Shown here: piece by piece, positions 1,171-29,477 of the stretch
Layout: each line of letters opens with the position of its first letter
Position numbering within the stretch: position 1 is the stretch's first letter
NCBI RefSeq assembly: GCF_003704095.1
Contig: NW_020846753.1
Coordinates: forward strand, 186,001-250,000
Length of the DNA stretch: 64,000 bases
Source: Pocillopora damicornis
Lineage: Eukaryota
Direction: 5' to 3'
Notes under the pieces: generated by a model
What the model was told of the DNA's origin: nothing
Database searches by the model: none
Seen by the model: only the letters and a program-made list of their open reading frames with translations
Program-made: the position numbers and the translations under genes

Positions 1171-4100
1171 ATGAAGAGTTCTCTTCTTTATCTAACGGTA
1201 GGTCCTTTATAGCTGTCAGCTAATTGAAAATCTTTGTGGATATTAATTTTTATCGAGTTCTTGGCGGATACCTTCAGCAAAATGGACGGTTTTTTCAAAA
1301 CATTGCAATTTGATTCTCTATATAACTAACATGCCACAGCTGCAAAAAGTATGCGATGGCAGAGCAGCGCCATAAACACAGCAAGTTGCACCTCTTCGGT
1401 AACACTGTTAGATGCATAACTCTGAGACTCCTAAAAAGTTAGTGATATAAACGTATTTATATATATAAACGTATTGTGATGCGAACGCTTCGAATAATCA
1501 TTACGAACATTTTCTTCTGCTAAATCAATTGTGGCGATATGTTTGTTAAAGAATAAACTTCTTCGTATATTCAACTGATAATCAGTTTTGCAAATATAAT
1601 ATTTTCATAAAAGACATTTCACCTTTGCGAACCTAAGGTATATATTTTGTAGTGCTAGAAATATCTGTTTCTACCGATAAAACAACACAACAAATCAAAA
1701 CTATATCTTGCCGCACTTGTTCATTGCTTAGATAGTGAGTTACCATCTCACAGTCCAAACAAGTTAAAATGCAAGATGCCCGCATAACTGAAACCTTATG
1801 GGTCGTTTACTCACTCTTCGATATTTCCAACTGCCCCAGGGTCTTTATCGTGTAAACATTGTTCTCAATCAACACATGGGAATGCCTTACATATCTGACA
1901 AAGTTTTGTAGTTGTGCACGCCACGCAGGTGATTTTGAGCGGCGACGCTTAATGAGTTCAAAGCCAATCTACAACATTTAGAAATTTTGTTCAATTAGGA
2001 AACAGTTTTTAATTCAGGCGTATACGAAGGAGACTATTTCACACTGGAGTACATCACAATACGACGAAATTATTTTAATGTCCTTTAAGGTAATAAATTT
2101 CTTTTCCCTCTGCTATCTGCTAAGGCAACATTTTCAGTTACATGCAAGAAGTCCAATATATGACCAGTATATCCTTAACTAGGGTAATGACAGAGAATCA
2201 ATTTCATCTCCCTTCTTCCTTCCTTTATGGGTATAATTTTTCTTCCTTTTGCTCTTTAATCATGCAACTTTTTTCAGTTACATGCAAGGGGTCCAATAAA
2301 TAACAAATAAATCCTCATCTAGGGTACTAACAGAGAAACATATTACTACCTTAGGTGCTGTTGATATGCATTACAGAAATTGAGTCTTTGCCAAACCCTA
2401 AAATGCTGACAGAACTTGGAAGCTTAGCAAGCTGGGAGGCCAAACAAAACTTTGGAATTGAAACCCGAGGTATTTGAAGATTTATGATTTAGTTAATCGG
2501 ACCAAAAACTTTAAAAAAAATTAAGAATTTAAGAACCGCTCCACTCAAGTTCATCCAAGTTTGTCGTTGTTTTTTCGCGAGGGAACTTGTTAGTGCTGTA
2601 GGTGAAGCATATAGACAAGGGTCTGGCATTAGCGACGGCAACAGTCTCAAAGAAAACCAATTGCTTAACTTCACAACTCATCAACATCTCAGTTTTCAAG
2701 ACCAGACGTTAAGTGCCTGAATTAGCTAAAAACTCTTTACCTCACCCTGATGATGAAATATGACTCCTGCAAAAGTTGCTAGAACGTCAAACCTCACTGC
2801 CACCAGCGACAGTCCTTTTCAAAACTTTTCTCAGTCGCATGATCAGATTATATAATCAACTCTTTAGAGCTTGAATTAAAAGTAAGTGGGTAAGGTGTGT
2901 GCTCGAGCCAGGTGGCCCGCTCATCCAGCCCGAGCCCAGCCCGGTTTCCATCGCATGAAGTGAATAGCAGCATTTGTAATTAGTACTTCTCCCCGGATGG
3001 CATACCAGTGCATCGCAAAGTTCNNNNNNNNNNCTTCCCCCTGCATATCATTTCACCAGGCTTTCCTGAAAAGAGGAAGTCAAAAGTACAGCCCTTCAAT
3101 TTTTTCCTTTAGTTTGCCTTTATGTTTAGGTTTTCTTTTCTTGCTTTTTTGTTTGAGTATTGTTTTTTTCTTATTTGTTGTTTCTTTTTTCCGTGTTGTT
3201 GCTTCCGTTGTTCTTCTTGTTCTTGATTTCAGTCAAAATTACGACGGCAGTATTCATCCAGATTTTCTATCCTTACTTAATGAATAAAATTATTCCTTAA
3301 GACTATTTTGTAGTACGATAGGATCACGGGCAAATCTTGCTAGACGCGAAATAATCGTGGAGTAAAGCACTTTTTTGTCTCACTCCTATTCAGGGCCTCG
3401 TCTTTCGGTCAGTAGAGGCGCCTAACTAACAAATTTAAATCCCTTTTCTGCAATTGCTAAAATTGCAGTCCACCCACCAGGATCATCTTCTTTCTTGATT
3501 AAAGCTTCCTGGCTAGAATCAATCATTGATTTGTATATTTCTTTTGATAGAGTCCAATCTGATGTGCGCCGCTTGCGTGGATAATTCTTGTTCTAATGAA
3601 CGCGTGGACAACTGTGATCCAGGATTTTCCTGTGTGACTATAAATACGGTTGATAATCAAAATCAGCCAGGCCTTCTTAAGTTTTGTTTCGCGACAATTT
3701 TTTGCTCTGGAAACACTTTATGCAATTCGCGTAACGATACCTTGGAAGGAAACCTGACATCTTGTATGTTAGAATGTTGCTCTACCAATTTATGCAATGC
3801 AGCAGTTACGCCGACCACAATGACCGAAGGACCGAACACTACTACATCAACAACCACAGAGGCTCCGACCACCACCGAGGCACCTACGACCACTGAGGCG
3901 CCGACGACGACAGAGGCACCAACGACCACCGAGGCGCCGACGACGACATCGGCACCAACGACTACCGCCGCACCTACCACACCCGCACCGACAATGATTA
4001 CAATTACACCAGGTGACTAAAATCTCTAAGTACAGCTTTTACCCAAACAGGACGTTTATCAGTTACCTTTCGAGTAAGAAAATTCATTTAAGTAAGAGAA

Positions 4101-5037
4101 AGGAAAGAGAGGGCGAGATCAACCAACAACATAGATCTAATTAAGCAAAAAAAAAAAAATGGGCATGAGTAATTTCTGTTTTCCTAATTCATACTTTAAA
4201 GTGTGCATAAGTAACGTGAAGATCTACAGGGCCACGTACAAATTTTGCAGATGCTGAGAAAATAATTTTTTGAGTATAAAGTAAAGATTTCGTAATGTCG
4301 ACGTTATGCTTTTGAAAATGTCGCTGAAATTGCTATTTATAGAATCATTAACGGAATTAGTGTCATTCGTCAACGGTCAGTTGAAAGAAAGAAAAATGGA
4401 AAACAGACACGCGGAAAGGAAAAAGCTTATCGTGATTAGGAATAATTTTTCAGGCATGGAGCCACTGATTAGCATTCATATCAAAACATCAGAAACGGTG
4501 AAAATCTCTTACAATTAAAAATGTCTATACATGTTTGTTCACAGGCCAAACTGTAGTCCTTAGATCGCCTGGTTACCCTGACAGTTATCCACCTGACACC
4601 ACCAGAACCTGGGATCTTGGTACTCTTGGAGAACACCGTTATCTTAGACTAGAGTTTCGGAGGTTCGACCTTGGACCAGGGTAAGCGTTTTGTGTGTGTA
4701 TATCATTATTATCATCATTATAATTTCTTTATCACAACCAACAGCATGAATATACGCCCGTCAACTGATGGCTGTTCTTCTATGAAGCAATAATGGACCA
4801 TTCGAGTATGGTAACTTTTCTATACCCAATCGGGATAAAAATATGTGGTCTGAATGGAAAATTTTGTTTGAAAAACTTACATCAGTAGAGTGCTAAACAT
4901 GGTTTTATACAAATGTTTGTTTATTTATAAATTATAATTCTTTTGCAGGGATACCTTAACTTTCGAGCAAGGGGGCCGAGAACTTTTAAGCCTAAATGGT
5001 GATTCCCGACTTAAGCGGTCCAAATATGGGTGTAGCA

Positions 5038-5068
<31 letters not shown>

Positions 5069-5568
5069 CGATGATGAAGTTGCTGGCCCTAATTCTCCTT
5101 ATGGTTTTTCCCAATTTGAAAAAATTGAATTAAATGATTTGGAGAAAGCCTATGACGAATACTTCTCATCCATTTATCCAAGGGCGCCGAGAAATAGATT
5201 TGAACACATTTGTGGATCTCAAAGTAATGAACCCATAATAGTTACATTTACTTCCGATAGCAATGATGGCCAGAACGGAGGATTTTATCTCAAAGTCACG
5301 AATAAAAAACGTAAGAATTTAAGGTTTATTTTTTAATTAATTAATTTTATCGATGAGTTGATAGATCCTTGTCGTATCTAATCTGTATCAAACCAGAAGC
5401 CATAACTAAACTTATAGGCCACCATTTTCAGTGTATCTAAACATGTCAAAACCAAGGGATAATGATCACAATTTGATCATCTGGAACCAATGCTAAACCT
5501 ATCCGGCATCTACTAACCCAATGCCGTTTTATCAATTTTCAGGTCGTGAAGACGACGACGATCGTTGA
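1171..5568 (+). CDS. Gene A: secreted LU(three-finger)-mucin-CUB protein with Asp-rich insert in a single degenerate CUB (~375 aa)
   Basis: Exons 1171-1197 (MKSSLLYLT), 2355-2469 (VLLICITEIES-LPNP...), 3551-4012 (12-Cys LU ending CCSTNLCN + TTTEAP repeats), 4545-4680 (LRSPGYPDSYPP..W), 4949-5310 (RLKR..C..D12..FTSDS..GF) and 5543-5568 (RREDDDDR*). All are GT-AG, total 1128 nt, open frame. Confidence 0.85.
2131..2340. repeat. Local ~141-bp-period tandem duplication in gene A intron 1
   Basis: TTTTCAGTTACATGCAAG..GTCCAATA..CTAGGGTA..ACAGAGAA occurs at 2131 and again at 2272. Confidence 0.7.
3853..3990 (+). repeat. 18-bp coding repeat (TTTEAP x5 + variants), mucin stalk
   Basis: Protein-level repeat with diverged synonymous codons. 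Confidence 0.9.
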
Positions 5569-6921: not shown

Positions 6922-9900
6922 TCACTTTCCTTCCACTGGACCTGAAAAGAAAACGCATGAGTCAAGTTGAAGTTTGTGGAGGAAATAATGCGATGTTACG
7001 CTTGCTTTGATTAGTCAGAGCCAATCCAAAGGTCATGTTTTGGGAGGTCATGTGATCACCCCAATAAACCAATAGAAATTTCTTTGTATTTCATTAATAC
7101 TAGAACAGTATTTAAACCCTGCCATTCTTTCTGTTGTCGTCAACTTCATCTTCATTTTTCCTTACAATTTTTTAGCAACTGCTAAATACATGATTTAATT
7201 CATAGAAAAGGTCTTTTGGTTTCGCAGCGTATCAAAAGACCCAAGCAATGGACAATGCTCGGTTTTGTACCACGTATTTTCTCAGATACTGTCCATAGTT
7301 AGGGGGGGGGGGCAAGAAAGTTGGGCTCAATATACTCTCAGTAGGCAAGAAGTCCAAAACCAACCTTTCCAAAGTAATTGCCGAGTCAATTATTTACTCC
7401 TATTTTGCTAAAAATAAAGAAAAGGAAATTAAACCCACCAGCGTCCTCCCCTCAATAAACTATTGCAGCCATATTGGTTCTAATGTTTTACAATCAGCGC
7501 TGCCTTTTTGTGCATAATTTTCTTATTCTTATTTGTACCTTCAGAATATCAAGAACGAAGAGCACGTTACCTCGTACAACTCGATAAGTGGCATCAAATC
7601 CTTTGAAGGTGATTATCTTGTCGGACTTGAAATTAACCGATATCTGTTCGCCATTTCCCAGGATGTAAACTCGAGGCAGGAATGGAAAACCATAAAATCT
7701 TGTCATTCCGAATCCAAAACGGAATTTTTTCTTCCAGTCTTCATCGTCATCGTCGTCGCCATCGTCATCATCATCGTCGTCATCTTCACAATCATCGTCT
7801 AAGAAATCGTCGTGTCTCCCTGTAAACCACGAATAAGCCCCGTATATGCCACTTAAACTACGTATCTCTCGAAAGCCACGGAGAATCTTGACGTGATCAA
7901 AACTGCAAGAAAAAAATGTAACTACCGATACAAAAGGGGAAAAAGCTTTTGCTAACAGCTATAAGATATGCTGAACTGAAAGCTGATGACAACAATCAGC
8001 AAAGTTTTCAACACACAACCCTTAATCACAATTCGACTTTCTAAGTAATTTTTATGAAACGAGATTACATTACCCAGAATTTTATTCACTCTTTTGCTTT
8101 CGAAATTTAGATAAAAGAGGAAAATTGACGCACTCACCCAAACGATAAAAGCGTGGAACCTTGATACGATTTGACTGTAAAGTTTTCGATTTAACCTCTA
8201 GTTCAGCCAGGTTACGTTAAACAAACACGAAGGGAAATAGAACCATACTTACAATATGTCGCTCATAAGAAAATGACGATACAAGGATACAAAGCCTTTT
8301 TGCTTATTGTTGCCAATGTAAATAAAGTTTACCTCTTTTAAAGAAGTATTGAAAAGATTAAGGTTTTATTTTCTCCTTTGCTAGGGTCTAAATAGTTCTT
8401 GTTTGAAATTTTTTAAGAGTAACTTTTTTCCTTTTGTTTCCAAACCTTGAACTGAAACAGAAACATTCGCTTTAACTAATAACAAAAGCCGCATCACTTC
8501 ACATGGATGGTTTCTATTAGCTCCCTTCTCTACAACTTGATGAAGAACAGTCGACTCACCACCGCTCAGTTTCAAAGGCCCGAAAATTTAAAACCAATGT
8601 GGATCCAAGAGGAACTCTGATAGTCCATCTACATTCAACATCGTTCGGATAATTTGCTGGAAAACCGGGAGAGGTAATGTTCCCGGATGCTGGAGCCAAA
8701 GGACCGCCACAAAGGGCTAAAAGAGAGAATAGATTGTTAGGTCAAGGAGATTCAGGAGATTAAAAGTCAATATGTTATAACAAACCTCTACATCCTAAAA
8801 TAAGTACTCATACTCTTCATACAGTTCCCAATAAATTTCCTAGGGTGTTTACAAGGAAAATTTGTTCAACAACCTTCTTTTGTTAGAGATCATTTCCTTT
8901 ATTCTTGTGACAATAAAGTCGGATCTACGCGATATTGTTCACGTATCGTTATTATAGGTCAAAAAGTTAGCAGCAGATATCCATTGAGCCCGTTGATAAT
9001 AAGACTAAGGATAGCTGCATCTTTATTGAATCGGATGATATCTTGATTTGATTAATGTGCGCACGTGTCTTACCTTTCCCCATAGTGTAGTGGGCAAAGA
9101 ATCCTCTCCTTGTCACCCATGGATCGGATTTGAACACAATTCTCACGGGTTCCCCATTACCATGAACAGAGACGACTTTCGCTTTTCTGTCTGCTCTCAG
9201 AGGCTCGGCAAACATGTAATTTCTTTTTCCATTTTTATCGTTGTCGTCATCGTAGTCGTCGTCGTCATCATCATCATCGTCATCACACTCGTCATCATCG
9301 TTATCATCGTTTTTATCCTTGAAATATTTATCGTCCTCAGATTCTCCTCCTCGTGTCAGACGACGGATCAGCCTCCTTCCCTGATAGACTTTAACCAAAT
9401 CATAGCTGCAATAAAATGATCAATAATGATGATGATAATGACAATGATAATGACAATGATCAATAATAATGATCAATAAAAAATGATCATTGTCAGGATA
9501 ACAATAATAATGATTATAGCGACCACTAAAGCAACAAATGCACAAGCAGGCAAAGCACAAATCCATTGCCTCAAAAAATTTCAAATTTCAAGAGAGCGCA
9601 ATATTGCAACCCCTTCGACGCTCTATAACCTCAGTGATAATGCAAAGAAGAAAAAAAAAGCTGACAAAGAAAAAAAGGCTTAAAAAAAACCTGAGGTGTT
9701 TACCAAAAAAAATTTTAACTTACCAAGGTTCTGTTTCAAAGAAGAGAAAGTCAATCCTGAATTGTGAGCCCGGAGGCACTGTTACGGTCCACACACAATA
9801 AGCGTTGCTGGGGTAGTTACCAGGGTAATTAGGAGATGCTAAGTTCCCGGATGGGCCCACTAAAGCACCGCCGCATTGCCCTGGTGCCACTGAGAAATTT

Positions 9901-12318
9901 AAAGAAGATTTGAACGTTAATAAGAGGAATAACATATTTTCCCATTCAGCAAACAATCTCATAATTTACAAAATATATTATTCTGAGAGTGTATCATTAC
10001 TCCTGATAAATGATCAGTTTTGATCGAGTTAACTGGCTCAATCCTGTAATGGAAGACACAGGACACTTCACAACTAAAACACAACTTCATGAACCTATTG
10101 TTTTCATTGTTTTCCTTATTGTTTCATAGTTTTGTATTTTTGTTCTCTTTTGTTTTACGTCAACTGTATCTTCCACACTATGGATTCATGGATTCTAGCT
10201 TGGATTTTAGGTCCCTGAACCTTTCTAAAACCTTCGCAGCCTATGTTAAGCTTTTTTTGTTGATAACCAGTGGAGAAATGAGTATTGTGAAAAGCCATTA
10301 ACTGTACTGGATTTTTTAACGTAACATGCCCAGCGACATTTGTGCGATTCATAAAATCACCCCACAGCTTCACCTGGTTTAGGAGGCGGTCTCGTGGTTG
10401 GACTAGGAAAAGGTAATGACTGTGTCACTGTAATGCATGCCAGCACTAACTACGGAAAAAAAAAAGATAATTGATTATTGCTACCCCACACTGTTTGTCA
10501 GAGACAATATGATATATCACTTTATATTGTAATTTTAACCAGGCCAGTGGTCTAATATCCCAGTTATCACTGATGTCAACAATTCTGGGAAGACGAATAT
10601 TGGCTCACTTACGTGTTCGTTTCGTATATTAAGTTATTCTGCGCATGGCAGTTAGAAGTTTTTTAATAGAAATTCAATACAGTCCAAGAGTCTCTAGGTC
10701 CTATAGCAACGTGCTGAATCCAATCTTTTTCGCGCAAAGGGTTAAGTGAGCGACTAAAAGACCAGAATGAGAAGAATTTTCACGGACGAAGTTTTAAAAG
10801 CAGTTGATGTTCAGCTCACGTACATCACACCGACGCCTGTTAGGGAAGGATTTCACCAACCATCTTGTTCTTCTGTTTCATTGTAATAAGTAATCAATAC
10901 CGTATTGTTTTCAATTTTGAAAGCTATCCTCAATATGTCTTTAAGTTATCTGAAGGCTTTTGCTTTCGACAGCAATTTCAGTTCACTGGGCAATACGAAA
11001 CATTGTATGATGGTCAACACCGTGGATGGTCAACACCGTGGATGGTGAACACCGTGGATGGTGAACACCGTGGATGGTGAACACCGTGGAAGGATCTTGT
11101 AATTACTCCGACATTCCAATCTATTCAAGTTGTTTTATCTTCATATCCTTATGCTGACACGTTAAATTTCTCAGGCTAAATTATCCTTTCTTGAAGTCAA
11201 GAGGCCAAAAAATATAAGGAAAGGTAAAAATCAACGAATATTGAAGGGGATTGATCAGTCACTCTATAGGTCTAAAAACAAATATTAAGCTTTCTCATGT
11301 GGATGGAAACTTTAGGGTCTTTTTGAAAGCTTACGTTGTTAATTATACGCTGGAGAAACCAATGAATTACCGGCGCCTTTTAGTTCCTGTGAGAAGTAAT
11401 TATGCTTTAGGGAAGACTACTAGTTAAGTTCTCTCAAAGGTGAGATACTTTGAATTATATGTTTAATTAAAGCAACTTTGTTTTAAGCGTGTGTTAAGAT
11501 ACGGTAACACTGTAGTATTTCGCTCAGAATGGCAACGCAAAATGTTCATTATCTCACACACATCGGCTTCATATAATCAGTCAAATATCGCTCTCTCTCT
11601 CTCTTTTTTTTTTTTTTTTTTCACTTATACTTTTGAAAGTAAAACGGTTATATTGCGAACCTGTCCATTTTTATTTTTTTTTAGTCTTGGCGTTGTACAG
11701 TTGTAACAATTCAACTTTGAACTAACATACTGGGGTATGACATTGATTGGCGATGCATGTTTGAATTTTATGATGTTTACTACGGAAAATGGGGAGCTAA
11801 TACTGTGTTGTGATAGGTTCAAAACAATCAGTGATTGTTCAAACTACAAACAATCAGGCACTCTAAAGCTGAGCTGATTAGAATAATTTATTTATAAAAA
11901 TGCCTAAAAGGCGCAATTCTGCGTAAGAACTAATATCTTCAGAGAGACACGTCCTGAACTCCCCCGCTTATCTCGCTTTAAATTGTTTCTTTTCTGATTA
12001 GTAACTGCTATTTCTGTGATGATGCTCCAAACGGGACAACAACTTAAATTGAGAGCTTCATGAAGTAAAACAACTCTGAATGTAGGTTCCTATGGGATAT
12101 ATTATAATAGTAGCAGCAGCGAGTTATCCTTACTAAAAGACGGTTTACCTCTACACCAATGTTTGCTCAACGTTATCCTTTATCCACCTAAAGCTAATTG
12201 ACAACTGGGAATTCGTGAGAAATGTTTACGAGCAACACTTCCAAAGTTCCTCAAAAACAATCGGAGAGAAATAATATATTTTAAGGCTTACCGTCAGTGC
12301 AGTTGGGGGAGCCTTCAT
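6922..12318 (-). CDS. Gene B: secreted 2xCUB protein with Asp-rich inserts, no LU exon (~369 aa)
   Basis: Minus-strand exons 12318-12292 (MKAPPTALT), 10449-10374 (LVLACITVTQS-LPFPSPTTRPPPKP), 9889-9724 (CGG..SPNYPGNYPSNAYCVW), 9405-9074, 8716-8560 (CGG..SPGFPANYPNDVECRW), 7902-7571 and 6941-6922 (GPVEGK*). Total 1110 nt, open frame. Confidence 0.87.
11009..11088. repeat. 16-bp minisatellite x5 (GATGGT[C/G]AACACCGTG) in gene B intron 1
   Basis: Five head-to-tail copies with no spacers. Confidence 0.95.
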
Positions 12319-12385
12319 TTTTGCTTGACAACTTGCTACGGTTCCTTGTTTACTCAGTTTTCTAAAATTTGCCAATTAACTTGCG

Positions 12386-12407
12386 TTTTATATGCTCAAC
12401 AACCAAT
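12386..12407 (-). promoter_or_regulatory. TATA box and CCAAT element upstream of gene B
   Basis: ATATAAAA on the minus strand ~70 bp upstream of the ATG, and CCAAT at 12403-12407. Confidence 0.5.
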
Positions 12408-16421: not shown

Positions 16422-16460
16422 GATTGGCCGATAGAGACTATATATATCGTGTTTATAAAT
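16422..16460 (+). promoter_or_regulatory. Reverse CCAAT (GATTGG) and TATA box upstream of gene C
   Basis: GATTGG at 16422-16427 and TATAAAT at 16454-16460, ~75 bp before the ATG. Confidence 0.5.
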
Positions 16461-16530
16461 CGAGTATCAAACCTGGCCATCTCCAGAAGACCTGAGGTGT
16501 GTAACGAGACAATTTTACGGACAACAGAAG

Positions 16531-19500: not shown

Positions 19501-22144
19501 GGGTGATGAATAATGACCGGTACCTAAATGGAATGAGATAACTGAAGGACTTGGGTGCTCTAAAACTGTTTTTATTTCATGTTATCTAATAGAGCCATTC
19601 AAAGACTGTGGCATCATCTTCACAGTATAGTCTATTTTTTTCTACAGCTTTGATTCCCTTCATATATATGTGGGTAGAAGGTTGGTTCATCGTCTTTCCG
19701 GGGACGACGCTGACGATGATGATGATGATGATAGATTTGAGAAATGTGAGAAGGATGACAAAGATGACGGTGATGACGGAGAAGGTATATTTGGCTGGTA
19801 CTTCAACCGAGATGAGGAGCTTGAAGATGAATCTGTCACTATTCAGGGAACAGGAGAGATGATAAGACTCGTTTTTATGTCAGATTACAGCATTACCAAG
19901 AGAGGATTCTATGCTAAATACAGTGTAATGAAAGGTAATTTCATGTGGCGTAAATAAAGATTAAGCCTTCTAGATAAATGGTTAGAGTCTGAGTAGCACT
20001 TCGAGAGGTATTTGAGGAACTTGCGTTGAATTTTGGGACACCATCACAGATCAAACAGTTTTTGAAGCAATCCTCAATGAACTGTAATTCATCAGCACCC
20101 ACCGAGGGTTTGGATACGATATTGCTAGGTTCATTATGTTTCGAGATTTTTACTTAAGCGAAGATTTCACATTAAACAGGTAGAAAAAAATATTTTATTG
20201 TGTTTAGGAAAGTAAATATACACTGCATATTGTTAGGATTATGATCTTTTAGGTTTAAAGGAGATTTGATTGAAAGACCATATGCATTGTTTGATCCCTG
20301 GTCCTTAACTTCTGAGGATGGATACGCTGTTGGAATGAGACTTGAACATGTCCACATGTTTCGAAATATTGACACATGCCATCGACTGAAACACTAGCAC
20401 TAACATCATATCTTTGTGAATTACAAAATGAATTTCAAATTAAACCAATGTTGAAAATTATAACCAGTTATCACTATCACCGTGGCCACTTATCGCTGAT
20501 CATTTAGAAAAAATTCAACATTTTGTTTTTCCTTCGCATTAGCGATTTGTGGAGGCCCATTGGCGTTGCCATCCGGAACCTTCAGATCCCCTGGCTACCC
20601 CGGCAAGTATCCGGACGACGTTAAATGCATCTGGACAATTAGAGTTCCACCAGGATCTACACTGGAATTAGATTTTCGATTCTTCAAAACTGAAAAATGG
20701 TAAACATTAGTGCTCTAACCTTGTTAGAGTGCCTTCCCCCACTTGAATGTCGTGAGACCAAAAGACAAAAAGAGGAAAATATAAAAAAAAACTTAAGAGC
20801 GGTAAACGCGCATGAAAAAGACATGTTTGGCTTTAGAGATGCATTAGAGAGAGTAACGTTAATTTTCTGAATGAATCATTAGGCGAAGTTCATTATAATC
20901 GTTCTCTCTTGGATTGTTTGGGCTGTCAATTGGATTCTAGGACTGTTAGCGACAATCGGTTGAGTTTCGAGAATTTAAAAAATTTAGAACCAAGTTGCTA
21001 CTTCATTCAGAGCCGAACAAAAGTTTTTTTGTTGTTTTTTTGTTTCCCAGCGATGATTACCTCAAAATTTTGCAAGGGGGCCGCAAAATACGAAAACTAA
21101 GTGGTGTTTACAGATACAGCTTGTTTGGATGGGGGAATAATGATGACGACGATTGTGACGATGATGACAAGGATGGCGAAGATGGCGAAGAAGGTGAAGA
21201 TGATGAATATGTTGGTGAAGATCGTTCCAAAAGGTTCATCTTCCCAGTACAGAGGTTTCCCTCTCCAGTAAGGAATCGTCTTGGTTTTCCAACGAGAGGC
21301 CGCATTGGCGCCCCATATGTTACACGAGTCCTTATTCCAGGAACGGGAGAGCTGATATCGATTGTCTTCAAATCCGATGACGACGATGTCACTGAAAAGG
21401 GTTTTGAAGCAACGTATCGTGTTAGACCAGGTGTGTTAATGTACACTGAAAGTTTCCTATCTTTTTATGCTTGGAATTGACTCTGTTTGTAACCATGGCA
21501 CTTTCTACATTGCTGATCAAGGACACTCGTCATTAAGTTCTCTATAGCACTATAGTAGAGTATGGGAGAGGAAAATTACAACGTCGATTCATATAAAGGG
21601 ACTAAGATGTTATCTTTAACATTTCGTTCGAAATGCAAAGAAACACAACTATGTTTTCTTCTTTTAAGGTTTTACCATTGTTCGTACCCCTGCGATGCGT
21701 CGCCTTCTTCTGTATTTCTTTCCCTCAATGTCACTTCACCAACATAAGAATTTCGTCCAGTTTAGATGAATGTTTAAATTCAGTCTTTCGTATAATAGAC
21801 TCTCTTTCCCCTTTTACTTCTTGATCCTTCAATATTTATCTGTATTGGTAAGAAAAACACGAGCTGAAATTCATTCAATTGAAGATATAAGACAAAAAAA
21901 ATTAATGTCTTTCATCGAACATTTTATTATTTTCATCTCAAAATTCACTTACAAATCATAATTTTAAACGAATTACCGATTCGTCGAATATCAAAATTTT
22001 TATTTATCCTTTCAAAAACCAGCAACTGAAGAAAAAAATTCAATTGAAGCTTCAAGTTCTATATTCTTGCTTTTGAATTGTAATTTGCAGTTATTAAATG
22101 TCATCTGTTCTCTATCTATTGCAGGGTCAGCTTTTCACGGTTGA
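16531..22144 (+). CDS. Gene C: secreted LU-mucin-CUB-CUB protein with acidic inserts (~508 aa)
   Basis: Exons 16531-16557 (MNSFLLALT), 17530-17623, 18127-18531 (12-Cys LU, CCSTPLCN, Thr/Pro stalk), 19019-19175, 19648-19934, 20543-20699, 21051-21430 and 22125-22144 (GSAFHG*). Total 1527 nt, open frame, with CUB motifs CGG..SP.YP..YP....C.W and F.SD....GF.A.Y. Confidence 0.88.
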
Positions 22145-23036: not shown

Positions 23037-26000
23037 ATGAAGAAAATCCTGCTTGTCCTGGTAAGGTTCTCATCGCTTGGGACACGTTATTTTCTGTGTA
23101 TCATTGAGCCTATCAGCTCGTACAATAATCATTCGTACCTGGGTAAAACAGTTTTGAACTTAGGCATAATTGCCTTTGAGATAGGAAATGGCGCCATTCA
23201 ATATATTCAGTATAAAAAATCATACCCCCAACCAGGTCCCGCATTACACATAGATGAAACAAGGGTGTAAGGTACTAAAGAAACTGTGGGACTGGGTCTG
23301 AGAGTACTGTAAGTCAATTTGGTTTTGTCAGCTGAGTTGATGATGTAAAATGGCCACCGTAAAGAAAGCAGCTGACGTTTCGAGCTTTACTCCTTCGTCA
23401 GAGCAAATGAATTTCAAATGAAATCTCTCTGAAAAAGGACTAGAGTTCAAAACAAAAACTTTAGAATCTGCTTGCGGTGGCCAATTTGCATCATCACCTC
23501 AGCTGAAAAAAATTAATTAGCCATCACTGATACAGCGACGTTTGATTGAGTATTTTCATTACCGAGACTAGTGCTGCTGGATCTATCAGTTTGAGGGAAA
23601 CTGGAATCATTTGCGCTCACTGAGTTGCTTGAAAATGAAATTTTATGGATAGCCCATCTAGAAAATGAAGGGGAAAAAAGCTATCCATATTACTTCTTTT
23701 AACTGGTTCAAAAACAGTCCCTCATTTAAAACACATTTATGTTTCACGATGCCTATATAAGTTGTTTATCCAATGGTATTGCACTTAACGATTAAACTCC
23801 CTTTTCCTTGTATTGAATGTCAATATATCTATTCCCTCCACCGACAAAACTTTTGTGACCACTTTGACTAAATGCGCTCATCTAAAGTTACATGAATAGA
23901 GTTAGTCAAAAATCATTTGATGATTCTATGGAAATTTCAAAACTCCGGCGGACGACACAAAGAAAAGTGAAGCATAGAAAGCCATTATTCTGCTCTATAG
24001 CAGAGATCAGTACAAGTCATTGTGATGAATTAACTGTGTGCCAATGTAGTTGTAAGACTGGATAGTTTTGTGTGCACATTTGTATCCACATGTCTAGCGG
24101 CCAAGTACATTAAAGCTGACAGAAGATATTTAATTTAAACGCGTATAGCTTGGTCGCAACATCAATATCACCATATGCATGCCCATCATGATCACGATGA
24201 AAATTCAATTTTATAGCAATTTTGTAGCATTGTAGTCGAAGCTACTCTCAGTTTGCACATCAATGAAACATTAACTCAAATCTTAAGCTTTGGACTCCTT
24301 AAAATTGTTTCTGAGTATGACTGTTTCCGATGTAAACGACACTGGTTATGTTGTTCATGTGATTTCAGTCTTCTTATATTTTCTTCTCACAGGAGTTGGA
24401 AATAAAAAACCAAAACTTTCCACATAAATGCTTAAGCTTCTACTTTGACTATGTAATGTAGGATTGGATGTAGATTCACTCGGTTCCGGTCGCGATTTTA
24501 TGTAAATCGTTTTTGACTACACCGATTAAGAAACTGATGCATTATGGCACGACGTTAAGAAACGCAAAAGGGCAATAACTGTGAAAATTTTTTGGCTAAA
24601 TAAAAAGCTCAAAACAAAACATGACGGCTCCATAGGGAGAAACGGTTACTAAGTAGCATGAGCGGTCACCAAACAGATTCTCTCTTAGAGATTTTATGTT
24701 GTGTTAAGTTTGATGCAAGAAATGAGATGTAAAGAGGTAGTTTGAACCGGGGAATTACTTTTGATCTTGTGGTCTGATCGCCTAGGTGAGAGTAGTCTTG
24801 TGAAGGACTGATGTCGGTAGTAGTGACTGACGCATTGAGTTCGACAACATTAGCGCAAGTTATCACCAGAGACGAGGGCTCTCGTGCGCCACTTAAATTC
24901 TTTGTTCTTCTATTTTTTTTTTCTTATTCCACTGAAGTGTTTATCATATTGCTAGTTTAATAACAACTTGAGATGATACGTTTTGGTAGATGCTGATGAC
25001 ATCATATTCAGCGGAAGGTGACTCGGTGCACGCTTCTATTCATAACTGGACAACTGATCTCGAGGACCTGGAGCTGAAAACCTTGCGACAAATTCAAGAA
25101 CAAGGTAGAAAGTACGACAGATTCATGTATTCTTGGGCATCAAGTTTAAGTGTATTTCTGATCGTGTTGATCGATTAAGAGGCTAATTTGCTCCTTCCCA
25201 GCTCTTTTGAAACACAAATAATTCTGCATTGAACATACTTAACCATCCATTAAAAAAAACAGTGATGATTACATAAAAACGTATGTTTCTTTTGATCCTT
25301 AACTCAAAAGATCCAACAGAAAAAGAAGAAAATTTATCCCAGCCACAAGTAAAGCAAACATAGCATTCTCACCCTCAATTTGGCACAATATTTTTTTGGA
25401 CCTGTTTGTTGTCGTTGTTGTACAAGGGAAGACAGGCAGTAAATGTTAGTCTGTTGTCGTGTCTTGTTCGAGTAAGCCTGCTCTTTCTCTCTTTAACTCA
25501 AATCCAACACCTGTTTCAGCTCCTATGCGTCTTAGATGTCACGTTTGTTTAGAACCCGTTTCATTGGAGAATTGCACAACTGCAGAAACACTGCGACTTT
25601 GCGAAAGAGGCTTTCGCTGCTACAACCTACAGGCATTTGACACTGCTCGGAACGCCCACATCTTTGCTAAAGGATGTCTTCAAAGTATTCTTTGCGCTCA
25701 AAATCGTGGATGTGATTTCCTTAACTTATCTCGTAATGGTTCCATTGGGTTCTGTTCGTTGGAATGCTGTCATACACAAGAGTGCAATGCTCAACCGAGG
25801 GTTTCATCTACAGCTCCACCACCACCGATGATCACAGAACGACCTACAACTGCAGGGTCAGTTCCTGTGACTCCATCAGGTAAATTCGTCAAGTGCAAGC
25901 AGCAGTTTCATCTGCTGTATATTGTAAATGAAGAATAATGGAAGCATCTCATGCATGCAAACAGCATCAAACAAGAGAGAAGATTAAGAGAAAGGTTTTG

Positions 26001-29000
26001 GTAAAATTTGAAACGACACCATCAATTGGGTCAGTATTCAAATCTTTCAGTTCTGCCCTTGATATTACCATGGTTAAATTATGAAAATAGTTGAATTTTA
26101 AAAAGCGCAGGCTTTAAATTCTTACGTTTTAACCTGTCAAATATCATTGTTTAACATGTTAAAAATTATTAGAATACTGCAAAACCACGTTATATTTTTA
26201 CTTAATTGTCACGATATAATACTCTAAGAGTTCATAGACAGACAGAAAAATGAAAAATGACATGAGATTTCACGTTTTTCCTATTTCGACGATCGTTTGT
26301 TTCTCCTTTCGTCATCTCAGCTTCGGTTTTCGCTTGTTTACCATTCATTCGCTGTTTCTTCAAAAATTGATAGCCTGAATTCACACGTTTCAATGAACAG
26401 GCAAATGCGGTGGTTCGCTATCTGCTTCATCTGGGAACTTTGCATCTCCAAATTATCCCAGTAAGTACCCCGACAATGCTGACTGCATCTGGATCATTCC
26501 TGTACCAAAAGGATCAACGTTAAAGATACAATTCGTTTACTTTTTTATGGAGCGAAGGTTAGTCATAATTTATTTTCTGAAATAAATAGTGGAGGGGGAC
26601 TCCGACAAGGAAAAATGGCGCAGCAGCGTTTTCGAATGACCATAATTGACCTTAGCTTCCGCGTTGGCACTTTTAATAATAAACGTATTTCTTGAGATTA
26701 ATTAAGAGGAGATCTTGAGAAAACTGTTATTTCTAAACTGTTTTTTCTTTGTAACATTTACCTTTTTTAAAACGCTTTCACCGAAACGTGTCAAAAATAC
26801 CGTTCCTAACTGTGATTTAACGCGAGTTATAAGCATTGCTTTTATTATTTTGCCAATCTTTTTTTAGATATGATTATGTAAAAATCTCTATGGGCCGACG
26901 ACTGCTTCGCCGTTTGACTGGAAGTCCTCGAAAAAGGGATAAGGTGATTTCCATAAAAGGAACTAGCGAGGTGGTTCGTGTTGCTTTCAAATCTGACCGC
27001 AGCGTTTCGAAGAGAGGGTTCTTTGCCAAATACAATGTGATGAAAGGTGACTCACTCTAAAAATCCTATATCAAAATCAATCTGTTAAATGGGGCACCTT
27101 GACGTTATAAGAACCAATAATTATCTTAACCTCTGAGTTAACAACAACGCCCTAAATGTCCCCTTATTTTCTCCTACATCACAGTATCGTGTTTTGAAAA
27201 GTAAATTTTTTATCTCTAATCACCTATTGTGCGAGAAGCTTTGCAGAGGTTTTATTTATTCTTCTACATCCATCCAACCTTGTCCAGTAGATTAATACTG
27301 TTCATGATAATGATAGTTATGTGATTAGTAGGAACCGAACCTGGGAATAAGTTCAACCGTCCTCTGGTATTCCATTTCATCAAAGCAAGTCATATAAACC
27401 CTCTCGATTGATAATGGTAATAGGACTTATTGGAGTCGAATTTGGTCTGTAATCTTACGAGTGATTGGCAAAGTCGGACGACCGCGAAGCCGGAATCCGG
27501 TTTCTTAATCACGACTATGATTACAGACAGAATTGGACGACACGAAGTCTTGTTACCAATTAATCAAAACTATGACAAAAATTTGAGAAAGAAACTAGAC
27601 GTAGGTTATACATTTTCACAAAAAACACAAAGTTAACTCAGTTAAATGCCTTCCGATGAGACAAACCGCACGCACATGACATGACGTGTTAACTGTCTCT
27701 TAGCTGTTCTATTACACTGTTCAATTACAAGCATGACGCGTGTACTATTCTATTAGTGCTCAAATCGGGCTGGTGATAACCAATCACGTTCGAGAATTTT
27801 TTTATAGTTTTGATTAACGTTTAAATTTACATTCATTTCAGCACGCAGCTGTGGAGGAACTTTACCTGGTTCCTCTGGTAGCTTCAAATCTCCAAATTAC
27901 CCTGCAAACTATCCAAACGACGTCCACTGCAAATGGACCATACATGTTCCGCGTGGAGCACTGCTTAGACTGAATTTTCGAACCTTCGAAACTGAACGCT
28001 GGTAAGTAATAAGAAATAATGGATACCGATTGAGGGCATGTTTTAAGTCACTCATCTTAACGTTTGTGTTTGATTTCTTTTCAGTAATGATTACGTAAAG
28101 ATATACCGAGGTCGTCGCTTGATTCGTCGACTGACGGGTCGATATGATCGCAACGGCAGGTACAGAGGCGGCGATGATACAAGATCTGTGTTTCAGCATG
28201 ATGATGATTGTGGCGATGACGATGACGATGACGACGACGACGACGACGACGATGATGATGATGACGACGACGACGACGATGATGATGAACGCGACAAGGA
28301 TGATGATATTGACGACTATAATGATGTTATAGATGACGATGATAGTAATATCCTACACGAAAATCCTGATGATGCTGTTAGCTTTTCAAAGAGGAAGTAT
28401 AGTAGATATAACCGTGTCCAACGAGCAAAGAATCGCTATAGGTCCAGGATAAGAAATCGCAAAGGATCCCGAATGAGAGGCCATCAACGCTTCTTGTATA
28501 TAACTCGGATTCGGGGAACGGGCGAGAAGATATCGATTATATTTAAAGCAGATCGCCGAAATACCGGAAAGGGCTTTTATACAACGTATTATGTTTCAAA
28601 AGGTAGTGAAAAATAAGTAATTTAATTACTCAACTCCAATGAATTTTTTAATACATTCTACCAAAATACACCATACAGGAATCTTTATCAATAATATAGA
28701 GCAGGAAAGCTGCTGACCTATTGTTATTTAATATTACCTAAAATCAATAATCTTTTTCACATGTTTATCATTGAGGTTAATAATATTTATTTGCAATGAT
28801 AATAAGCCGGAGTGGAGTCCAGTTAATAATAGTAATTGAACTGAGTGGAGTGCAATTTGGGCTGAAATCACAAGTATGATTTCAGGTCAAAAGTGCACGA
28901 CACTAGGTTCAATTATCCCTTTATTACATCCATTTTGAAATCGCCCAAATACAGGAATTGGTCAGTTCAAATATTTTATTGATGTAGTACTGAGCCGGTC

Positions 29001-29477
29001 TGAAATTAAATTCATCCATTTTTTGGGAGAAAGAGTAAATTTTTGGAAACAAAATTTGCAAAAATTTGGCACATGATGCTCTTTGTCTTTTATTTTCCTG
29101 AAATTTGATCGGTTACTTTAAACAAGCCTTGAAATCTGATTGGTTGTTTTGTTCTTAGAGTAGCCTCCTCATTGACTGGGAAGAAGGTGCGATTTAAAGC
29201 AAAAAATGGTGCGATTCGTGAATAAATCGCATCAATTAGAGCCAATTAGATTACAGGGACCACCAGTGTTTTCAAAATGGGTGTAATGAGGCCTGTAATC
29301 ATAGGAGTGATAGGAGAAATCGAACGAACGCGAAGCACGGAATCCGATTTTTTAATCACTAGTATGATTACAGACAAAACCAACCACGTTCGAAAATTTT
29401 GTTACGGCTCTGATTAAAATTGAAATACTGATGAAATCATTTTCTTCAAATTTCTCGCAGTTCATTCAGGCCGTTGA
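23037..29477 (+). CDS. Gene D: secreted LU-mucin-CUB-CUB protein; CUB1 has no insert, CUB2 has a D24 + Arg-rich insert (~509 aa)
   Basis: Exons 23037-23060 (MKKILLVL), 24990-25104, 25520-25879 (12-Cys LU, CCHTQECN), 26401-26557, 26868-27046, 27842-28001, 28085-28602 and 29461-29477 (VHSGR*). Total 1530 nt, open frame, same intron phases as gene C. Confidence 0.87.
23329..23505. mobile_element. Inverted-repeat element with hammerhead-like core (Penelope-like/retrozyme-type remnant)
   Basis: 34-bp arms at 23329-23362 and 23472-23505 (4 mismatches). The minus strand of 23371-23404 reads CTGACGA-AGGAGTAAAGCTC-GAAAC-GTCAG. Confidence 0.5.
27412..27817. repeat. Interspersed repeat (MITE-like) in gene D intron
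   Basis: Shares blocks (GGAATCCG..TTAATCAC..TATGATTACAGACA; CAxCACGTTCGA..TGATTAA) with 28795-29417. Confidence 0.6.
28795..29417. repeat. Second copy of the same repeat, interrupted by a ~460-bp related element
   Basis: The 5' end (GAGTGGAGTCCA, ~28809) and its continuation (CTGTAATCAT, ~29293) match 27412-27817 and flank an insert that begins GAGTGGAGTGCAATTTGG. Confidence 0.5.

What the first reader, a model, noticed from the sequence alone, without database searches (positions are those of the whole stretch)
1171..29477. Four-gene cluster of secreted LU-mucin-CUB proteins carrying poly-Asp loops: candidate skeletal organic matrix (biomineralization) locus
Seen: four paralogues share exon phases (micro exon 1 phase 0, exon 2 0-1, LU exon 1-1, each CUB split by a phase-2 intron, tiny last exon). 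They have signal peptides, no TM or GPI tail, and Asp-rich inserts inside the CUB folds. The ORF track shows only fragments, so the family is easy to miss. Established: Asp-rich secreted proteins bind Ca2+ and control CaCO3 deposition in coral skeletons. From memory (unverified), the Acropora millepora skeletal proteome has 'CUB domain-containing' and 'threonine-rich' proteins with a similar Cys-rich/Thr-rich/CUB layout. Inference: this is an expanded family that presents mineral-binding loops on a folded scaffold at the end of a glycosylated stalk.
Basis: partly seen in the sequence, partly recalled or inferred. Interest (0 to 1): 0.9.

Follow-up and report, generated by a model that had tools for sequence, protein, structure and literature searches.

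The report
Coral acidic CUB-protein gene cluster
This is a real four-gene cluster in the stony coral Pocillopora that encodes secreted proteins with long aspartate-rich loops, and it belongs to a coral-only family whose relatives in other corals have already been found inside the skeleton, so it is a sound but largely known biomineralization candidate.

Summary
The window is Pocillopora damicornis (or a near-identical genome). It carries four tandem paralogues: A(+), B(-), C(+), D(+).

- All four share a 24-27 nt first coding exon (phase 0) and a phase 0-1 second exon.
- Every CUB domain is split by a phase-2 intron at the codon of the third cysteine.
- B, C and D end in a 14-17 nt last coding exon.
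- Only A, C and D carry the three-finger (Ly6/uPAR) plus Thr/Pro-stalk exon. B lacks it.
- A has one CUB; the others have two.
- Six of the seven CUBs carry a poly-Asp insert just after the fourth cysteine. D's first CUB has none.

RNA contigs from four runs confirm D's splicing. Both assembly gaps fall in introns.

- The family includes the Acropora skeletal proteins "CUB domain-containing protein" and "threonine-rich protein".
- A July 2026 preprint names the Stylophora orthologue of gene C as a skeletal acidic protein, alongside a two-beta-sandwich acidic protein (SAARP12) from the Desmophyllum skeleton.
- Close relatives were found only in stony corals.

The genes are already annotated in RefSeq. 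I rate this a new member of a known kind, of moderate interest.

The parts
1171..1197 (+). Gene A exon 1 coding part (MKSSLLYLT), phase 0, donor GTAGGT
   Evidence: Sequence read. Same length and -LT ending as exon 1 of B and C.
2550..2601 (+). Gene A exon 2 (model only), phase 0-1; it completes the signal peptide and joins straight to the LU exon
   Evidence: Splice-site and phase logic. No transcript support. The assembly gap 3024-3033 lies in the following intron.
3551..4012 (+). Gene A LU (three-finger) plus Thr-rich stalk exon, phase 1-1, with an 18-nt TTTEAP tandem repeat
   Evidence: 10 Cys ending CCSTNLCN.
4545..4680 (+). Gene A CUB N-terminal half (lacks Cys1 and Cys2), ends in phase 2
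   Evidence: Pfam CUB E 1.2e-3, below the cut-off. Splice sites.
4949..5310 (+). Gene A CUB C-terminal half with a 12-Asp run. Gly replaces Cys3, as in the Acropora CUB-dcp 'PGD' motif
   Evidence: Compared with PMC4890752 S15 Fig. The last exon was not located; a candidate starts at 5543.
12292..12318 (-). Gene B exon 1 coding part (MKAPPTALT)
   Evidence: Matches the N-terminus of P. meandrina CAH3118482.1.
10374..10449 (-). Gene B exon 2 (signal peptide end plus short Pro-rich linker), phase 0-1, spliced directly to CUB1
   Evidence: 100% match to P0069 residues 8-32. Sequence.
9724..9889 (-). Gene B CUB1 N-terminal half
   Evidence: Pfam CUB E 1.4e-11..
9074..9405 (-). Gene B CUB1 C-terminal half with a 22-residue acidic core (18 D)
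8560..8716 (-). Gene B CUB2 N-terminal half
   Evidence: Pfam CUB E 1.3e-12..
7571..7902 (-). Gene B CUB2 C-terminal half with a 21-residue acidic core (17 D)
6922..6941 (-). Gene B last coding exon (…GPVEGK, stop)
   Evidence: Matches the P0069 C-terminus.
16531..16557 (+). Gene C exon 1 coding part (MNSFLLALT)
   Evidence: Matches P0071 and P0133.
17530..17623 (+). Gene C exon 2, phase 0-1 (signal peptide end plus linker ending QEQ)
18127..18531 (+). Gene C LU plus Thr/Pro stalk exon, phase 1-1
   Evidence: 100% identical to P0133 residues 41-176..
19019..19175 (+). Gene C CUB1 N-terminal half
   Evidence: Pfam CUB E 3.2e-12..
19648..19934 (+). Gene C CUB1 C-terminal half with a 25-residue acidic core. 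The assembly gap 19386-19413 lies in the preceding intron
20543..20699 (+). Gene C CUB2 N-terminal half
   Evidence: Pfam CUB E 4.5e-12..
21051..21430 (+). Gene C CUB2 C-terminal half with a D/E core followed by RSKR
22125..22144 (+). Gene C last coding exon (…GSAFHG, stop)
   Evidence: Matches the P0133 C-terminus.
23037..23060 (+). Gene D exon 1 coding part (MKKILLVL), predicted
   Evidence: Resembles the Oculina D-type N-terminus. It lies outside the stretch on which reads were laid.
24990..25104 (+). Gene D exon 2, phase 0-1
   Evidence: RNA contigs in 4 runs, junction to 25520. AG at 24988-24989.
25520..25879 (+). Gene D LU plus short Pro/Thr stalk exon, phase 1-1
   Evidence: junctions. 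AF2 pLDDT 90.7, and the best PDB matches are uPAR domains at TM 0.65-0.71.
26401..26557 (+). Gene D CUB1 N-terminal half
   Evidence: Pfam CUB E 2.3e-13. Junctions.
26868..27046 (+). Gene D CUB1 C-terminal half, with no acidic insert; Arg replaces Cys3 and Cys4 is absent
   Evidence: Pfam CUB positions 55-110, E 1e-5..
27842..28001 (+). Gene D CUB2 N-terminal half
   Evidence: Pfam CUB E 1.6e-13..
28085..28602 (+). Gene D CUB2 C-terminal half with a 48-residue acidic core (24-Asp run) followed by an Arg/Lys-rich stretch
29461..29477 (+). Gene D last coding exon (…VHSGR, stop)
   Evidence: Junction 28602 > 29462 in one run (X6). Three other runs read on unspliced to about 28861, which gives the alternative end …SKGSEK.

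Best explanation
The locus is a tandem cluster of four paralogous genes for secreted, stony-coral-specific CUB proteins. They belong to the skeletal organic matrix toolkit.

**Shown**
- Each product starts with a signal peptide split over two exons.
- A, C and D then carry a three-finger (Ly6/uPAR-fold) domain and a Thr/Pro-rich stalk. B lacks that exon.
- All end in one (A) or two (B, C, D) CUB beta-sandwiches.
- In six of the seven CUBs a disordered poly-Asp loop, followed by a basic stretch, is inserted just after the fourth cysteine.
- Glu, Asp and Asp align with conserved positions of solved CUB domains (cubilin).

**Inferred**
- The aligned Glu/Asp/Asp are the Ca2+ ligands of Ca2+-binding CUB domains.
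- The Thr/Pro stalk is probably O-glycosylated.
- The insert lies next to the CUB Ca2+ site.
- The proteins are secreted by calcifying cells into the calcifying space or vesicles.
- There the folded CUB holds a site-bound Ca2+, and the adjacent poly-Asp loop binds further Ca2+ or the surface of amorphous or crystalline CaCO3.
- The proteins become occluded in the skeleton.
- Gene B arose by loss of the frame-neutral (phase 1-1) LU-mucin exon.
For: **Gene structure and transcription**
- Gene anatomy and exon phases.
- Spliced poly-A RNA for gene D in four runs.
- B and C are identical to RefSeq P. damicornis proteins XP_027053451.1 and XP_027053432.1.

**Domains and fold**
- CUB by Pfam.
- CUB by sequence match to cubilin, PCPE-1, neuropilin and MASP, with Glu/Asp/Asp aligned to conserved cubilin positions.
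- AF2 model of B shows two beta-sandwiches (pLDDT 75-90) with disordered residues 108-162 and 272-324. Best tandem match is PCPE-1 CUB1CUB2, TM 0.62.
- The LU model has pLDDT 90.7 and matches only three-finger proteins.
- The acidic insert, with a 'DDDCDDD' core, is conserved in position across robust and complex corals.

**Skeletal evidence in relatives**
- Acropora CUB-dcp and Thr-rich skeletal proteins.
- S. pistillata XP_022799127.1 and Desmophyllum SAARP12.
- S. pistillata XP_022799089.1 in insoluble skeleton.
- CUB-dcp and Thr-rich protein are upregulated in early calicoblasts of A. muricata.

**Distribution and synteny**
- Close relatives only in Scleractinia; the next-best hits are generic CUB proteins 35-60 orders of magnitude weaker.
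- The order B(-) C(+) D(+) GPCR is conserved in Stylophora.
Against: - There is no proteomic, in situ or single-cell evidence for the Pocillopora genes themselves.
- By whole-protein criteria they are not 'acidic proteins'. B has 17.4% D+E and pI 4.79. C has 14.2% and pI 4.89. D-type orthologues have 10-12% D+E and pI about 9.3.
- D-type proteins pair the acidic block with an equally long Arg/Lys block, which may neutralise it.
- Presence in a skeletal proteome does not prove a role in mineral control; extracellular matrix proteins can be occluded passively.
- I could not confirm that SAARP12 (FUN_024181-T1) is the B-type or C-type orthologue, because its sequence is not in the held text.
- Absence from anemones rests on word-seeded searches with a length window.
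Confidence: 0.65

Rival explanations
1. These are matrix-assembly cofactors rather than mineral binders. The tandem Ca2+-binding CUBs grip a basic residue of a partner such as collagen or another matrix protein, or of a tolloid-type protease substrate, as PCPE-1 does with procollagen. The acidic/basic loops tune that binding, and the proteins end up in the skeleton only because the matrix is occluded.
For: The best tandem structural match is PCPE-1 CUB1CUB2 bound to the procollagen C-propeptide (6fzv_D, TM 0.62). Strong sequence matches include cubilin, PCPE-1 and MASP. The preprint groups similar annotations under collagen fibril organisation. Glu/Asp/Asp at conserved CUB positions is the classic ligand-binding arrangement (the mechanism is established knowledge of Ca2+-binding CUB domains).
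Against: Inserts of 13-48 mostly Asp residues next to the binding face have no counterpart in PCPE-1 or MASP. Restriction to stony corals, although anemones also have collagen and tolloid, points to a skeleton-specific role.
Confidence: 0.2
2. These are secreted mucus or epithelial surface glycoproteins with an adhesion or innate-immune role (DMBT1-like: a mucin stalk plus CUBs), unrelated to calcification.
For: [quoted passage not shown] There is an LU domain plus a mucin-like stalk. The RNA runs that hold the genes are whole-colony or metatranscriptome libraries, so the tissue of origin is unknown.
Against: Orthologues are recovered from cleaned skeleton in three genera. No relatives were found in anemones, which share mucus and immune functions. 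Gene B has no stalk at all.
Confidence: 0.08
3. These are luminal Ca2+ buffers or carriers of the secretory pathway or calcifying vesicles (calsequestrin-like, low affinity and high capacity). They deliver Ca2+ or buffer protons rather than acting on the crystal.
For: Long poly-Asp runs are typical of high-capacity Ca2+ buffers. The preprint proposes that D/E-rich regions contribute Ca2+ and buffer pH in vesicles.
Against: There is no retention signal. Signal peptide, stalk and CUB form an extracellular architecture, and orthologues are found in the extracellular skeleton. This reading overlaps with the main explanation rather than excluding it.
Confidence: 0.07

Closest known systems
Acropora skeletal organic matrix proteins 'CUB domain-containing protein' (Swiss-Prot B3EX01, CDP_ACRMI) and 'threonine-rich protein'; A. 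digitifera CUB dcp-1 and dcp-2
   Same: They share the layout: signal peptide, 10-Cys domain ending CCxxxxCN, Thr-rich stalk, then a CUB with an acidic insert followed by a basic stretch at the same place. Gene A also shares the 'PGD' replacement of Cys3. The window's LU profile recovers them.
   Different: They have a single CUB, and their insert is mixed D/E/Y rather than poly-Asp. LU identity to A, C and D is only about 30-35%. In the LU tree gene A does not group with them; the tree is poorly resolved and A sits on a long branch. The published descriptions say 'no other known domains', so the three-finger domain was not recognised there.
[quoted passage not shown]
   Same: Both are described as two beta-sandwiches joined by a short linker, each with a Ca2+ site at its edge, plus disordered D/E-rich segments, and are reported from skeleton. 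XP_022799127.1 is the orthologue of gene C. The D. pertusum B-type protein KAJ7357565.1 (70% identical to B) meets that paper's acidity criteria: D+E 19.2%, pI 4.46.
   Different: The preprint does not call the domains CUB. It does not describe the LU-mucin N-terminal part, the gene cluster or the exon structure, and it states that no tandem topology exists in the PDB. Here PCPE-1, neuropilin and cubilin tandem CUBs match. The identity of SAARP12 with the B-type or C-type could not be checked.
Ca2+-binding CUB domains of cubilin, PCPE-1, MASP/C1r/C1s, neuropilin and TSG-6
   Same: They share the fold, both disulfides in most copies, and Glu/Asp/Asp at aligned conserved positions.
   Different: Those proteins have no poly-Asp insert after Cys4. 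The loop between the Glu and Cys3 is four residues shorter here. No protease, EGF or other partner domains are present.
Coral acid-rich proteins CARP4/SAARP1 and CARP5/SAARP2
   Same: Both are secreted skeletal proteins that combine a folded beta-sandwich with disordered Asp-rich segments.
   Different: The fold differs (Ig/FN3-like according to the preprint, versus CUB), there is no sequence relation, and those proteins have a much higher overall acidity.

Membership tests
CUB domain (Pfam PF00431) | Profile match above Pfam's gathering score over the roughly 110-residue domain | tested here: met
   P0069 (B) scores 119 bits and P0133 (C) 118 bits, with two stretches each; the cut-off is 21.4. 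D's half-exons score 51 and 26 bits. Gene A's N-terminal half reaches only 19.6 bits, just under the cut-off.
CUB domain (Pfam PF00431) | Beta-sandwich fold | tested here: met
   AF2 model of B matched by Foldseek: PCPE-1 6fzv_D (TM 0.62), single CUBs 6gh8_A (TM 0.75) and 2wno (TM 0.79).
CUB domain (Pfam PF00431) | Two disulfides (Cys1-Cys2, Cys3-Cys4) | tested here: inconclusive
   All four Cys are present in B1, B2, C1, C2 and D2. A lacks Cys1, Cys2 and Cys3. D1 lacks Cys3 and Cys4. Loss of a disulfide is known in some CUB domains.
Ca2+-binding CUB subtype | Conserved Glu, Asp (after Cys3) and Asp (in the F-x-S-D strand) that coordinate Ca2+ | tested here: met
   Residue-by-residue alignment to cubilin 3kq4_B puts E of '..TE', D of 'YD' and D of 'SD' at conserved cubilin positions. 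They are conserved across the family. That these positions coordinate Ca2+ rests on established knowledge of CUB domains; Ca2+ binding itself was not tested.
Ly6/uPAR (LU, three-finger) domain, Pfam PF00021 | Profile match above the gathering score | tested here: not met
   15-20 bits against a cut-off of 24.8, although end to end on the model (positions 2-81 of 82).
Ly6/uPAR (LU, three-finger) domain, Pfam PF00021 | Ten-cysteine pattern with C-terminal CCxxxxCN | tested here: met
   Seven Cys and the Asn of the CCxxxxCN end are invariant in 24 sequences; an eighth Cys is nearly invariant.
Ly6/uPAR (LU, three-finger) domain, Pfam PF00021 | Three-finger fold | tested here: met
   AF2 pLDDT 90.7. 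All the top PDB matches are uPAR domains (TM 0.65-0.71), BMP/activin receptor ectodomains, GPIHBP1, PSCA, CD59 and snake three-finger toxins, at modest E-values of 7e-3 and above.
Coral skeletal CUB-dcp / Thr-rich protein family | Shared architecture and detectable homology to B3EX01 | tested here: met
   The LU profile hits P0030/P0039. tblastn of P0039 against gene A gives E 1e-24. The layouts were compared. Gene B shares only the CUB part.
Coral skeletal CUB-dcp / Thr-rich protein family | Protein detected in cleaned skeleton by mass spectrometry | not testable with these tools
   Reported for orthologues or paralogues in Acropora, Stylophora and Desmophyllum. No Pocillopora skeletal proteome was found.
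Coral 'acidic proteins' (CARP/SAARP) as defined in the 2026 preprint | More than 14.5% D+E and pI below 4.5 for the whole protein | tested here: not met
   B has 17.4% and pI 4.79. C has 14.2% and pI 4.89. D-type orthologues have 10.3-11.5% and pI 9.3 (precursors including the signal peptide). The Desmophyllum and Acropora B-type and the Acropora C-type do meet it.
Mucin-like O-glycosylated stalk | Thr/Pro-rich tandem repeats | tested here: met
   Gene A has an 18-nt repeat in 6-7 copies (TTTEAP). C and D have shorter T/P-rich stretches. Glycosylation itself is not testable here.

The most novel reading that the evidence does not exclude
At the origin of stony corals, a Ca2+-binding CUB domain was turned into a mineral-interacting module. 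A poly-Asp loop, with a following basic stretch that often carries dibasic sites, was inserted directly after Cys4 beside the Ca2+ site. The module was coupled to a three-finger domain on a mucin stalk.

The resulting cluster (single-CUB A-type, LU-less B-type made by loss of a frame-neutral exon, C-type, and net-basic D-type) would predate the split between robust and complex corals. It would supply functionally distinct matrix components. These might be processed at the dibasic sites and at the conserved C-terminal Gly-Lys/Arg.

Neither the three-finger domain nor the cluster nor the exon history appears in the papers read here.
Probability: 0.3. Interest if true: 0.6.

Novelty: new member of a known kind. 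Interest (0 to 1): 0.4.

Why it matters
Coral skeleton formation depends on a small set of secreted proteins, and few of them have a folded, interpretable structure.

- This family places a disordered poly-Asp loop on a well-understood Ca2+-binding scaffold. That makes a clean loop-deletion experiment possible.
- The cluster gives four natural variants: one or two CUBs, with or without the stalk, acidic or net basic, and one CUB with no loop at all. They can be compared directly.
- It also ties three separately named sets of skeletal proteins into one gene family with a traceable exon history: CUB-dcp, threonine-rich protein, and the proteins named in the 2026 preprint (SAARP12 and 'tolloid-like 2').

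However, the family's skeletal role is already in the literature and the genes are annotated. The gain is refinement, not discovery.

Tried and rejected
- **LU exon for gene B.** I looked with tblastn of the A, C and D LU exons against the whole window, and with a scan for Cys-rich minus-strand ORFs. None exists, and the database protein confirms it.
- **D's upstream region.** DNA similarity to the other paralogues: none.
- **Ab initio signal-peptide scan.** Too noisy to use alone; it was resolved through database proteins.
- **Homologue search with A. millepora CUB-dcp.** It was swamped by Thr-rich words and scored only 4 proteins, so no Pocillopora or Stylophora A-type protein was recovered.
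- **The look-up of encoding contigs.** Nothing on record for P0069 and P0075. P0125 worked.
- **LU-domain tree.** Gene D pairs with the Stylophora D-type (100/99), but gene A sits on a long branch without starred support. Its orthology to Acropora CUB-dcp remains open.
- **Earlier findings of this scan.** Blank both by place and by words.
- **P. acuta laser-capture paper.** It does not mention these genes.
- **Exon 2 of gene A ending in QDQ at 2706.** Rejected because its donor would be phase 2 and cannot join the phase-1 LU acceptor.
- **Joined spliced models.** I did not hand them to any search, fold or complex tool. Exons were searched one by one by reference, and full-length work used database proteins returned by the tools.

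Full report
**What is there**

The window has 33-41% G+C and is eukaryotic. ORFs appear only as exon-sized fragments.

Stop-to-stop translation and Pfam show seven CUB domains in 1-31 kb, each in two pieces, and three Cys-rich plus Thr-rich exons. They form four genes:
- A on the plus strand, 1171 to at least 5310.
- B on the minus strand, 12318 down to 6922.
- C on the plus strand, 16531-22144.
- D on the plus strand, 23037-29477.

No further family member lies elsewhere in the window.

**Whose genome**

The products of B and C match RefSeq proteins of Pocillopora damicornis exon by exon:
- B matches XP_027053451.1, named 'CUB and sushi domain-containing protein 1-like', 367 aa. Identity is 100% in four exon pieces and 99.1% in the CUB2b piece, whose alignment runs past the exon end.
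- C is 100% identical to XP_027053432.1, named 'CUB domain-containing protein-like', 508 aa.

The window's assembly has 234 Mb in 4393 contigs. RNA runs that hold the exons are labelled coral or marine metagenome.

**Exon structure**

| Element | Observation |
|---|---|
| Exon 1 | 27, 27, 27 and 24 coding nt in A, B, C, D. Encodes M-x-x-x-L-L-x-L-T-like starts. Ends in phase 0 at GTAAG or GTAGG |
| Exon 2 | Phase 0-1. Completes the signal peptide; in C and D it adds a linker ending QEQ |
| LU-mucin exons of A, C, D | 462, 405 and 360 nt, phase 1-1 |
| Each CUB | Cut by a phase-2 intron: TG\|GT…AG\|Y makes the Cys3 codon. In A it makes Gly, in D1 Arg |
| Second CUB half | Ends in phase 1 |
| Last exon of B, C, D | Only 14-17 coding nt. 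D's stop ends at 29477 |

**Transcription**

Contigs of four RNA runs with four different study codes carry D's junctions:
- In all four runs: 25104>25520, 25879>26401, 26557>26868 and 27046>27842.
- In three runs: 28001>28085.
- All are GT..AG, with 0-4 mismatches per exon.

The splice to the last exon is seen in one run. Three other runs read on to about 28861, which would end the protein six codons later.

The contigs carry 40 to 1187 further 5' letters that do not lie in 23650-24988. This fits exon 1 at 23037, outside the laid stretch. The 1187-letter case may be a C-D read-through, because a Stylophora gene model (PFX33522.1) also fuses the two genes. That idea is not tested.

C is also backed by an independent RNA-derived ORF, P0071, which differs at a few residues.

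**Assembly gaps**

The gap at 19386-19413 lies between C's CUB1a (ends 19175) and CUB1b (starts 19648). P0071 joins these exons with no residue missing, so the gap is intronic.

The gap at 3024-3033 lies between my exon 2 of A (2550-2601) and the LU exon (3551). Phases agree across it, but exon 2 of A is only a model. I cannot exclude a small hidden exon. I did not try to fill either gap.

**Corrections to the observation**

- Gene B has no LU or mucin exon. Its exon 2 (10449-10374) encodes the end of the signal peptide plus a short Pro-rich linker and splices straight to CUB1.
- The same LU-less type exists in Acropora and Desmophyllum. Because the missing exon is phase 1-1, its loss keeps the frame. 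I infer that this is how the B-type arose.
- Gene A has one CUB, and it lacks Cys1, Cys2 and Cys3.
- D's CUB1 has no acidic insert and has lost Cys3 and Cys4. This state is shared with its orthologues in Stylophora, Oculina and Orbicella.

**The acidic loops**

| CUB | Acidic core (residues) | Asp in core |
|---|---|---|
| A | 13 | 12 |
| B1 | 22 | 18 |
| B2 | 21 | 17 |
| C1 | 25 | 15 |
| C2 | 22 | 12 D + 5 E |
| D2 | 48 | 38, with a run of 24 |

- The Asp codons are a GAT/GAC mixture, not a pure microsatellite.
- Lengths differ slightly between Pocillopora species.
- In five of the six inserts the core starts at or around Cys4. In an 18-sequence alignment spanning robust and complex corals, that Cys and several flanking Asp are invariant.
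- A basic stretch follows the core, often with dibasic motifs: RSKR in C2, KR in B1, KKK in B2, and a long Arg-rich run in D2.

**Folds**

An AF2 model of B shows two beta-sandwiches at pLDDT 75-90. Residues 108-162 and 272-324 are below 50; these are the inserts.

Foldseek finds PCPE-1 CUB1CUB2 (TM 0.62), neuropilin a1a2, cubilin, and MASP/C1r/C1s. A phmmer alignment to cubilin places the family's Glu, Asp and Asp at conserved cubilin positions. It also shows that the insert replaces the short segment after Cys4. From established knowledge of Ca2+-binding CUB domains, those three positions are the Ca2+ ligands. Because Cys4 is disulfide-bonded to Cys3, which sits two residues before the Ca2+-binding Asp, I infer that the loop emerges beside the Ca2+ site. 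I could not measure distances in the model.

The N-terminal domain falls short of Pfam's UPAR_LY6 cut-off (15-20 bits against 24.8), although it aligns end to end. It does have the ten-Cys pattern with CCxxxxCN. Its AF2 model (pLDDT 90.7) matches only three-finger proteins, best uPAR domains at TM 0.65-0.71.

In the window's own genome the LU profile finds only A, C and D strongly. It also finds three ordinary GPI-tailed Ly6-like genes weakly.

**Relatives and literature**

The LU profile, run against 1.84 billion representatives, gave 38 hits. They include Acropora 'CUB domain-containing protein' (Swiss-Prot B3EX01) and an Orbicella D-type protein. The nearest sea-anemone hit is an Actinia protein with three LU domains and stalks but no CUB.

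Takeuchi et al. 2016 (PMC4890752) and Ramos-Silva et al. 2013 (PMC3748352) list CUB-dcp and threonine-rich protein among Acropora skeletal proteins. Takeuchi et al. note a Thr-rich sequence 'absent in other animal genomes'. Their S15 figure shows the same layout, including an acidic-then-basic insert in the CUB.

Searches with a D-type and with the B protein found close relatives only in stony corals: Pocillopora, Stylophora, Acropora, Desmophyllum, Oculina and Orbicella. Generic CUB proteins follow, and they are far weaker.

A July 2026 preprint (10.64898/2026.03.24.713908) reports 'SAARP12' from the Desmophyllum skeleton. It describes two beta-sandwiches with Ca2+ sites and disordered D/E regions. 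It names S. pistillata XP_022799127.1 as an overlooked skeletal acidic protein of the same topology. That accession is the C-type orthologue.

Peled et al. 2020 list XP_022799089.1, a 352-aa 'CUB domain-containing protein-like', in insoluble Stylophora skeleton. By its size it may be the A-type, but I could not check this.

In A. muricata single-cell data, CUB-dcp and Thr-rich protein rise in early calicoblasts.

**Synteny**

In Stylophora the order B(-), C(+), D(+), then a rhodopsin-type receptor gene, is the same as in the window. In Acropora the B-type and C-type carry neighbouring accession numbers and share a chromosome-scale contig with CUB-dcp. This suggests, but does not prove, that the cluster predates the robust-complex split.

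**Mechanism**

*Shown:* the proteins have secreted-protein architecture, folded CUBs with Glu/Asp/Asp at the conserved CUB positions, and disordered poly-Asp loops at a fixed site. Gene D is transcribed and spliced. Orthologues occur in skeletons.

*Inferred:* the proteins are secreted by calcifying cells. The CUB Ca2+ site and the adjacent Asp loop bind Ca2+ or CaCO3 surfaces. The stalk is O-glycosylated.

*A complication:* by whole-protein measures, B (pI 4.79) and C (pI 4.89) are only mildly acidic. D-type proteins are basic (pI 9.3), because an Arg/Lys block follows the Asp block. The paralogues therefore probably do different jobs. A role in matrix assembly, PCPE-like, is the main rival.

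**Verdict**

The genes are annotated, and the family's skeletal role is in the literature for other genera.

The points this analysis adds, none of which appear in the papers read here, are modest:
- the three-finger identity of the N-terminal domain;
- the cluster and its exon history;
- the exact placement of the insert at Cys4;
- the net-basic D-type.

Noticed in passing
window 41876-43375 (+), spanning the assembly gap 42421-42929: A long open frame encodes a Glu/Ser/Gly-rich repeat (27/54/108-nt tandem repeat, units like EGSSGESGE). This is a second, unrelated, highly acidic candidate protein about 12 kb downstream of the cluster. It explains the strong purine skew at 42-44 kb.
   Followed up: partly
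window 30630-31583 (+): A single-exon 317-aa ORF has a weak rhodopsin-family 7TM match (Pfam 7tm_1, E 2e-5, below the cut-off). It is 66-70% identical to a stretch downstream of the D-type gene in the Stylophora locus, where it matches in two pieces, so it marks the conserved edge of the cluster.
   Followed up: partly
window 27431-27828 and 28824-29420 (introns or 3' region of gene D): RNA contig depth is in the hundreds to thousands, from many contigs only 90-95% alike. There are many loose ends and odd joints. These look like interspersed repeats (transposon-like) transcribed from many genomic copies, not parts of gene D.
   Followed up: no
last coding exons: 6922-6941 (-), 22125-22144 (+), 29461-29477 (+); orthologues in alignment A2: Most family members end in Gly-Lys, Gly-Arg or Gly (…VEGK, …HSGR, …FHG, …YGK, …YGR). 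This resembles a carboxypeptidase and amidation signal. The meaning is unknown.
   Followed up: no
window 21051-21430, 9074-9405, 28085-28602; orthologues: The acidic core is regularly followed by dibasic or furin-like motifs: RSKR in C2, PRKR in Stylophora C, RRKR and RRKKRR in Acropora CUB-dcp. The loop may be cut by a proprotein convertase.
   Followed up: no
window 23650-24988 and L007 (Stylophora) 10001-22647: One RNA contig carries 1187 letters 5' of D's exon 2 that do not lie in the laid stretch. The Stylophora GenBank model PFX33522.1 fuses the C-type and D-type genes through an internal acceptor of D's exon 2. C-D read-through or conjoined transcripts are possible.
   Followed up: no
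window 11009-11090: A 16-nt tandem repeat, 5 copies at 98% identity, lies in gene B's first intron.
   Followed up: no
window 5543 (+): This is a candidate last exon for gene A. It has a good polypyrimidine tract and, joined in phase 1, would add RREDDDDR and a stop. That recalls the acidic C-terminal tails of Acropora CUB-dcp. It is unverified.
   Followed up: no
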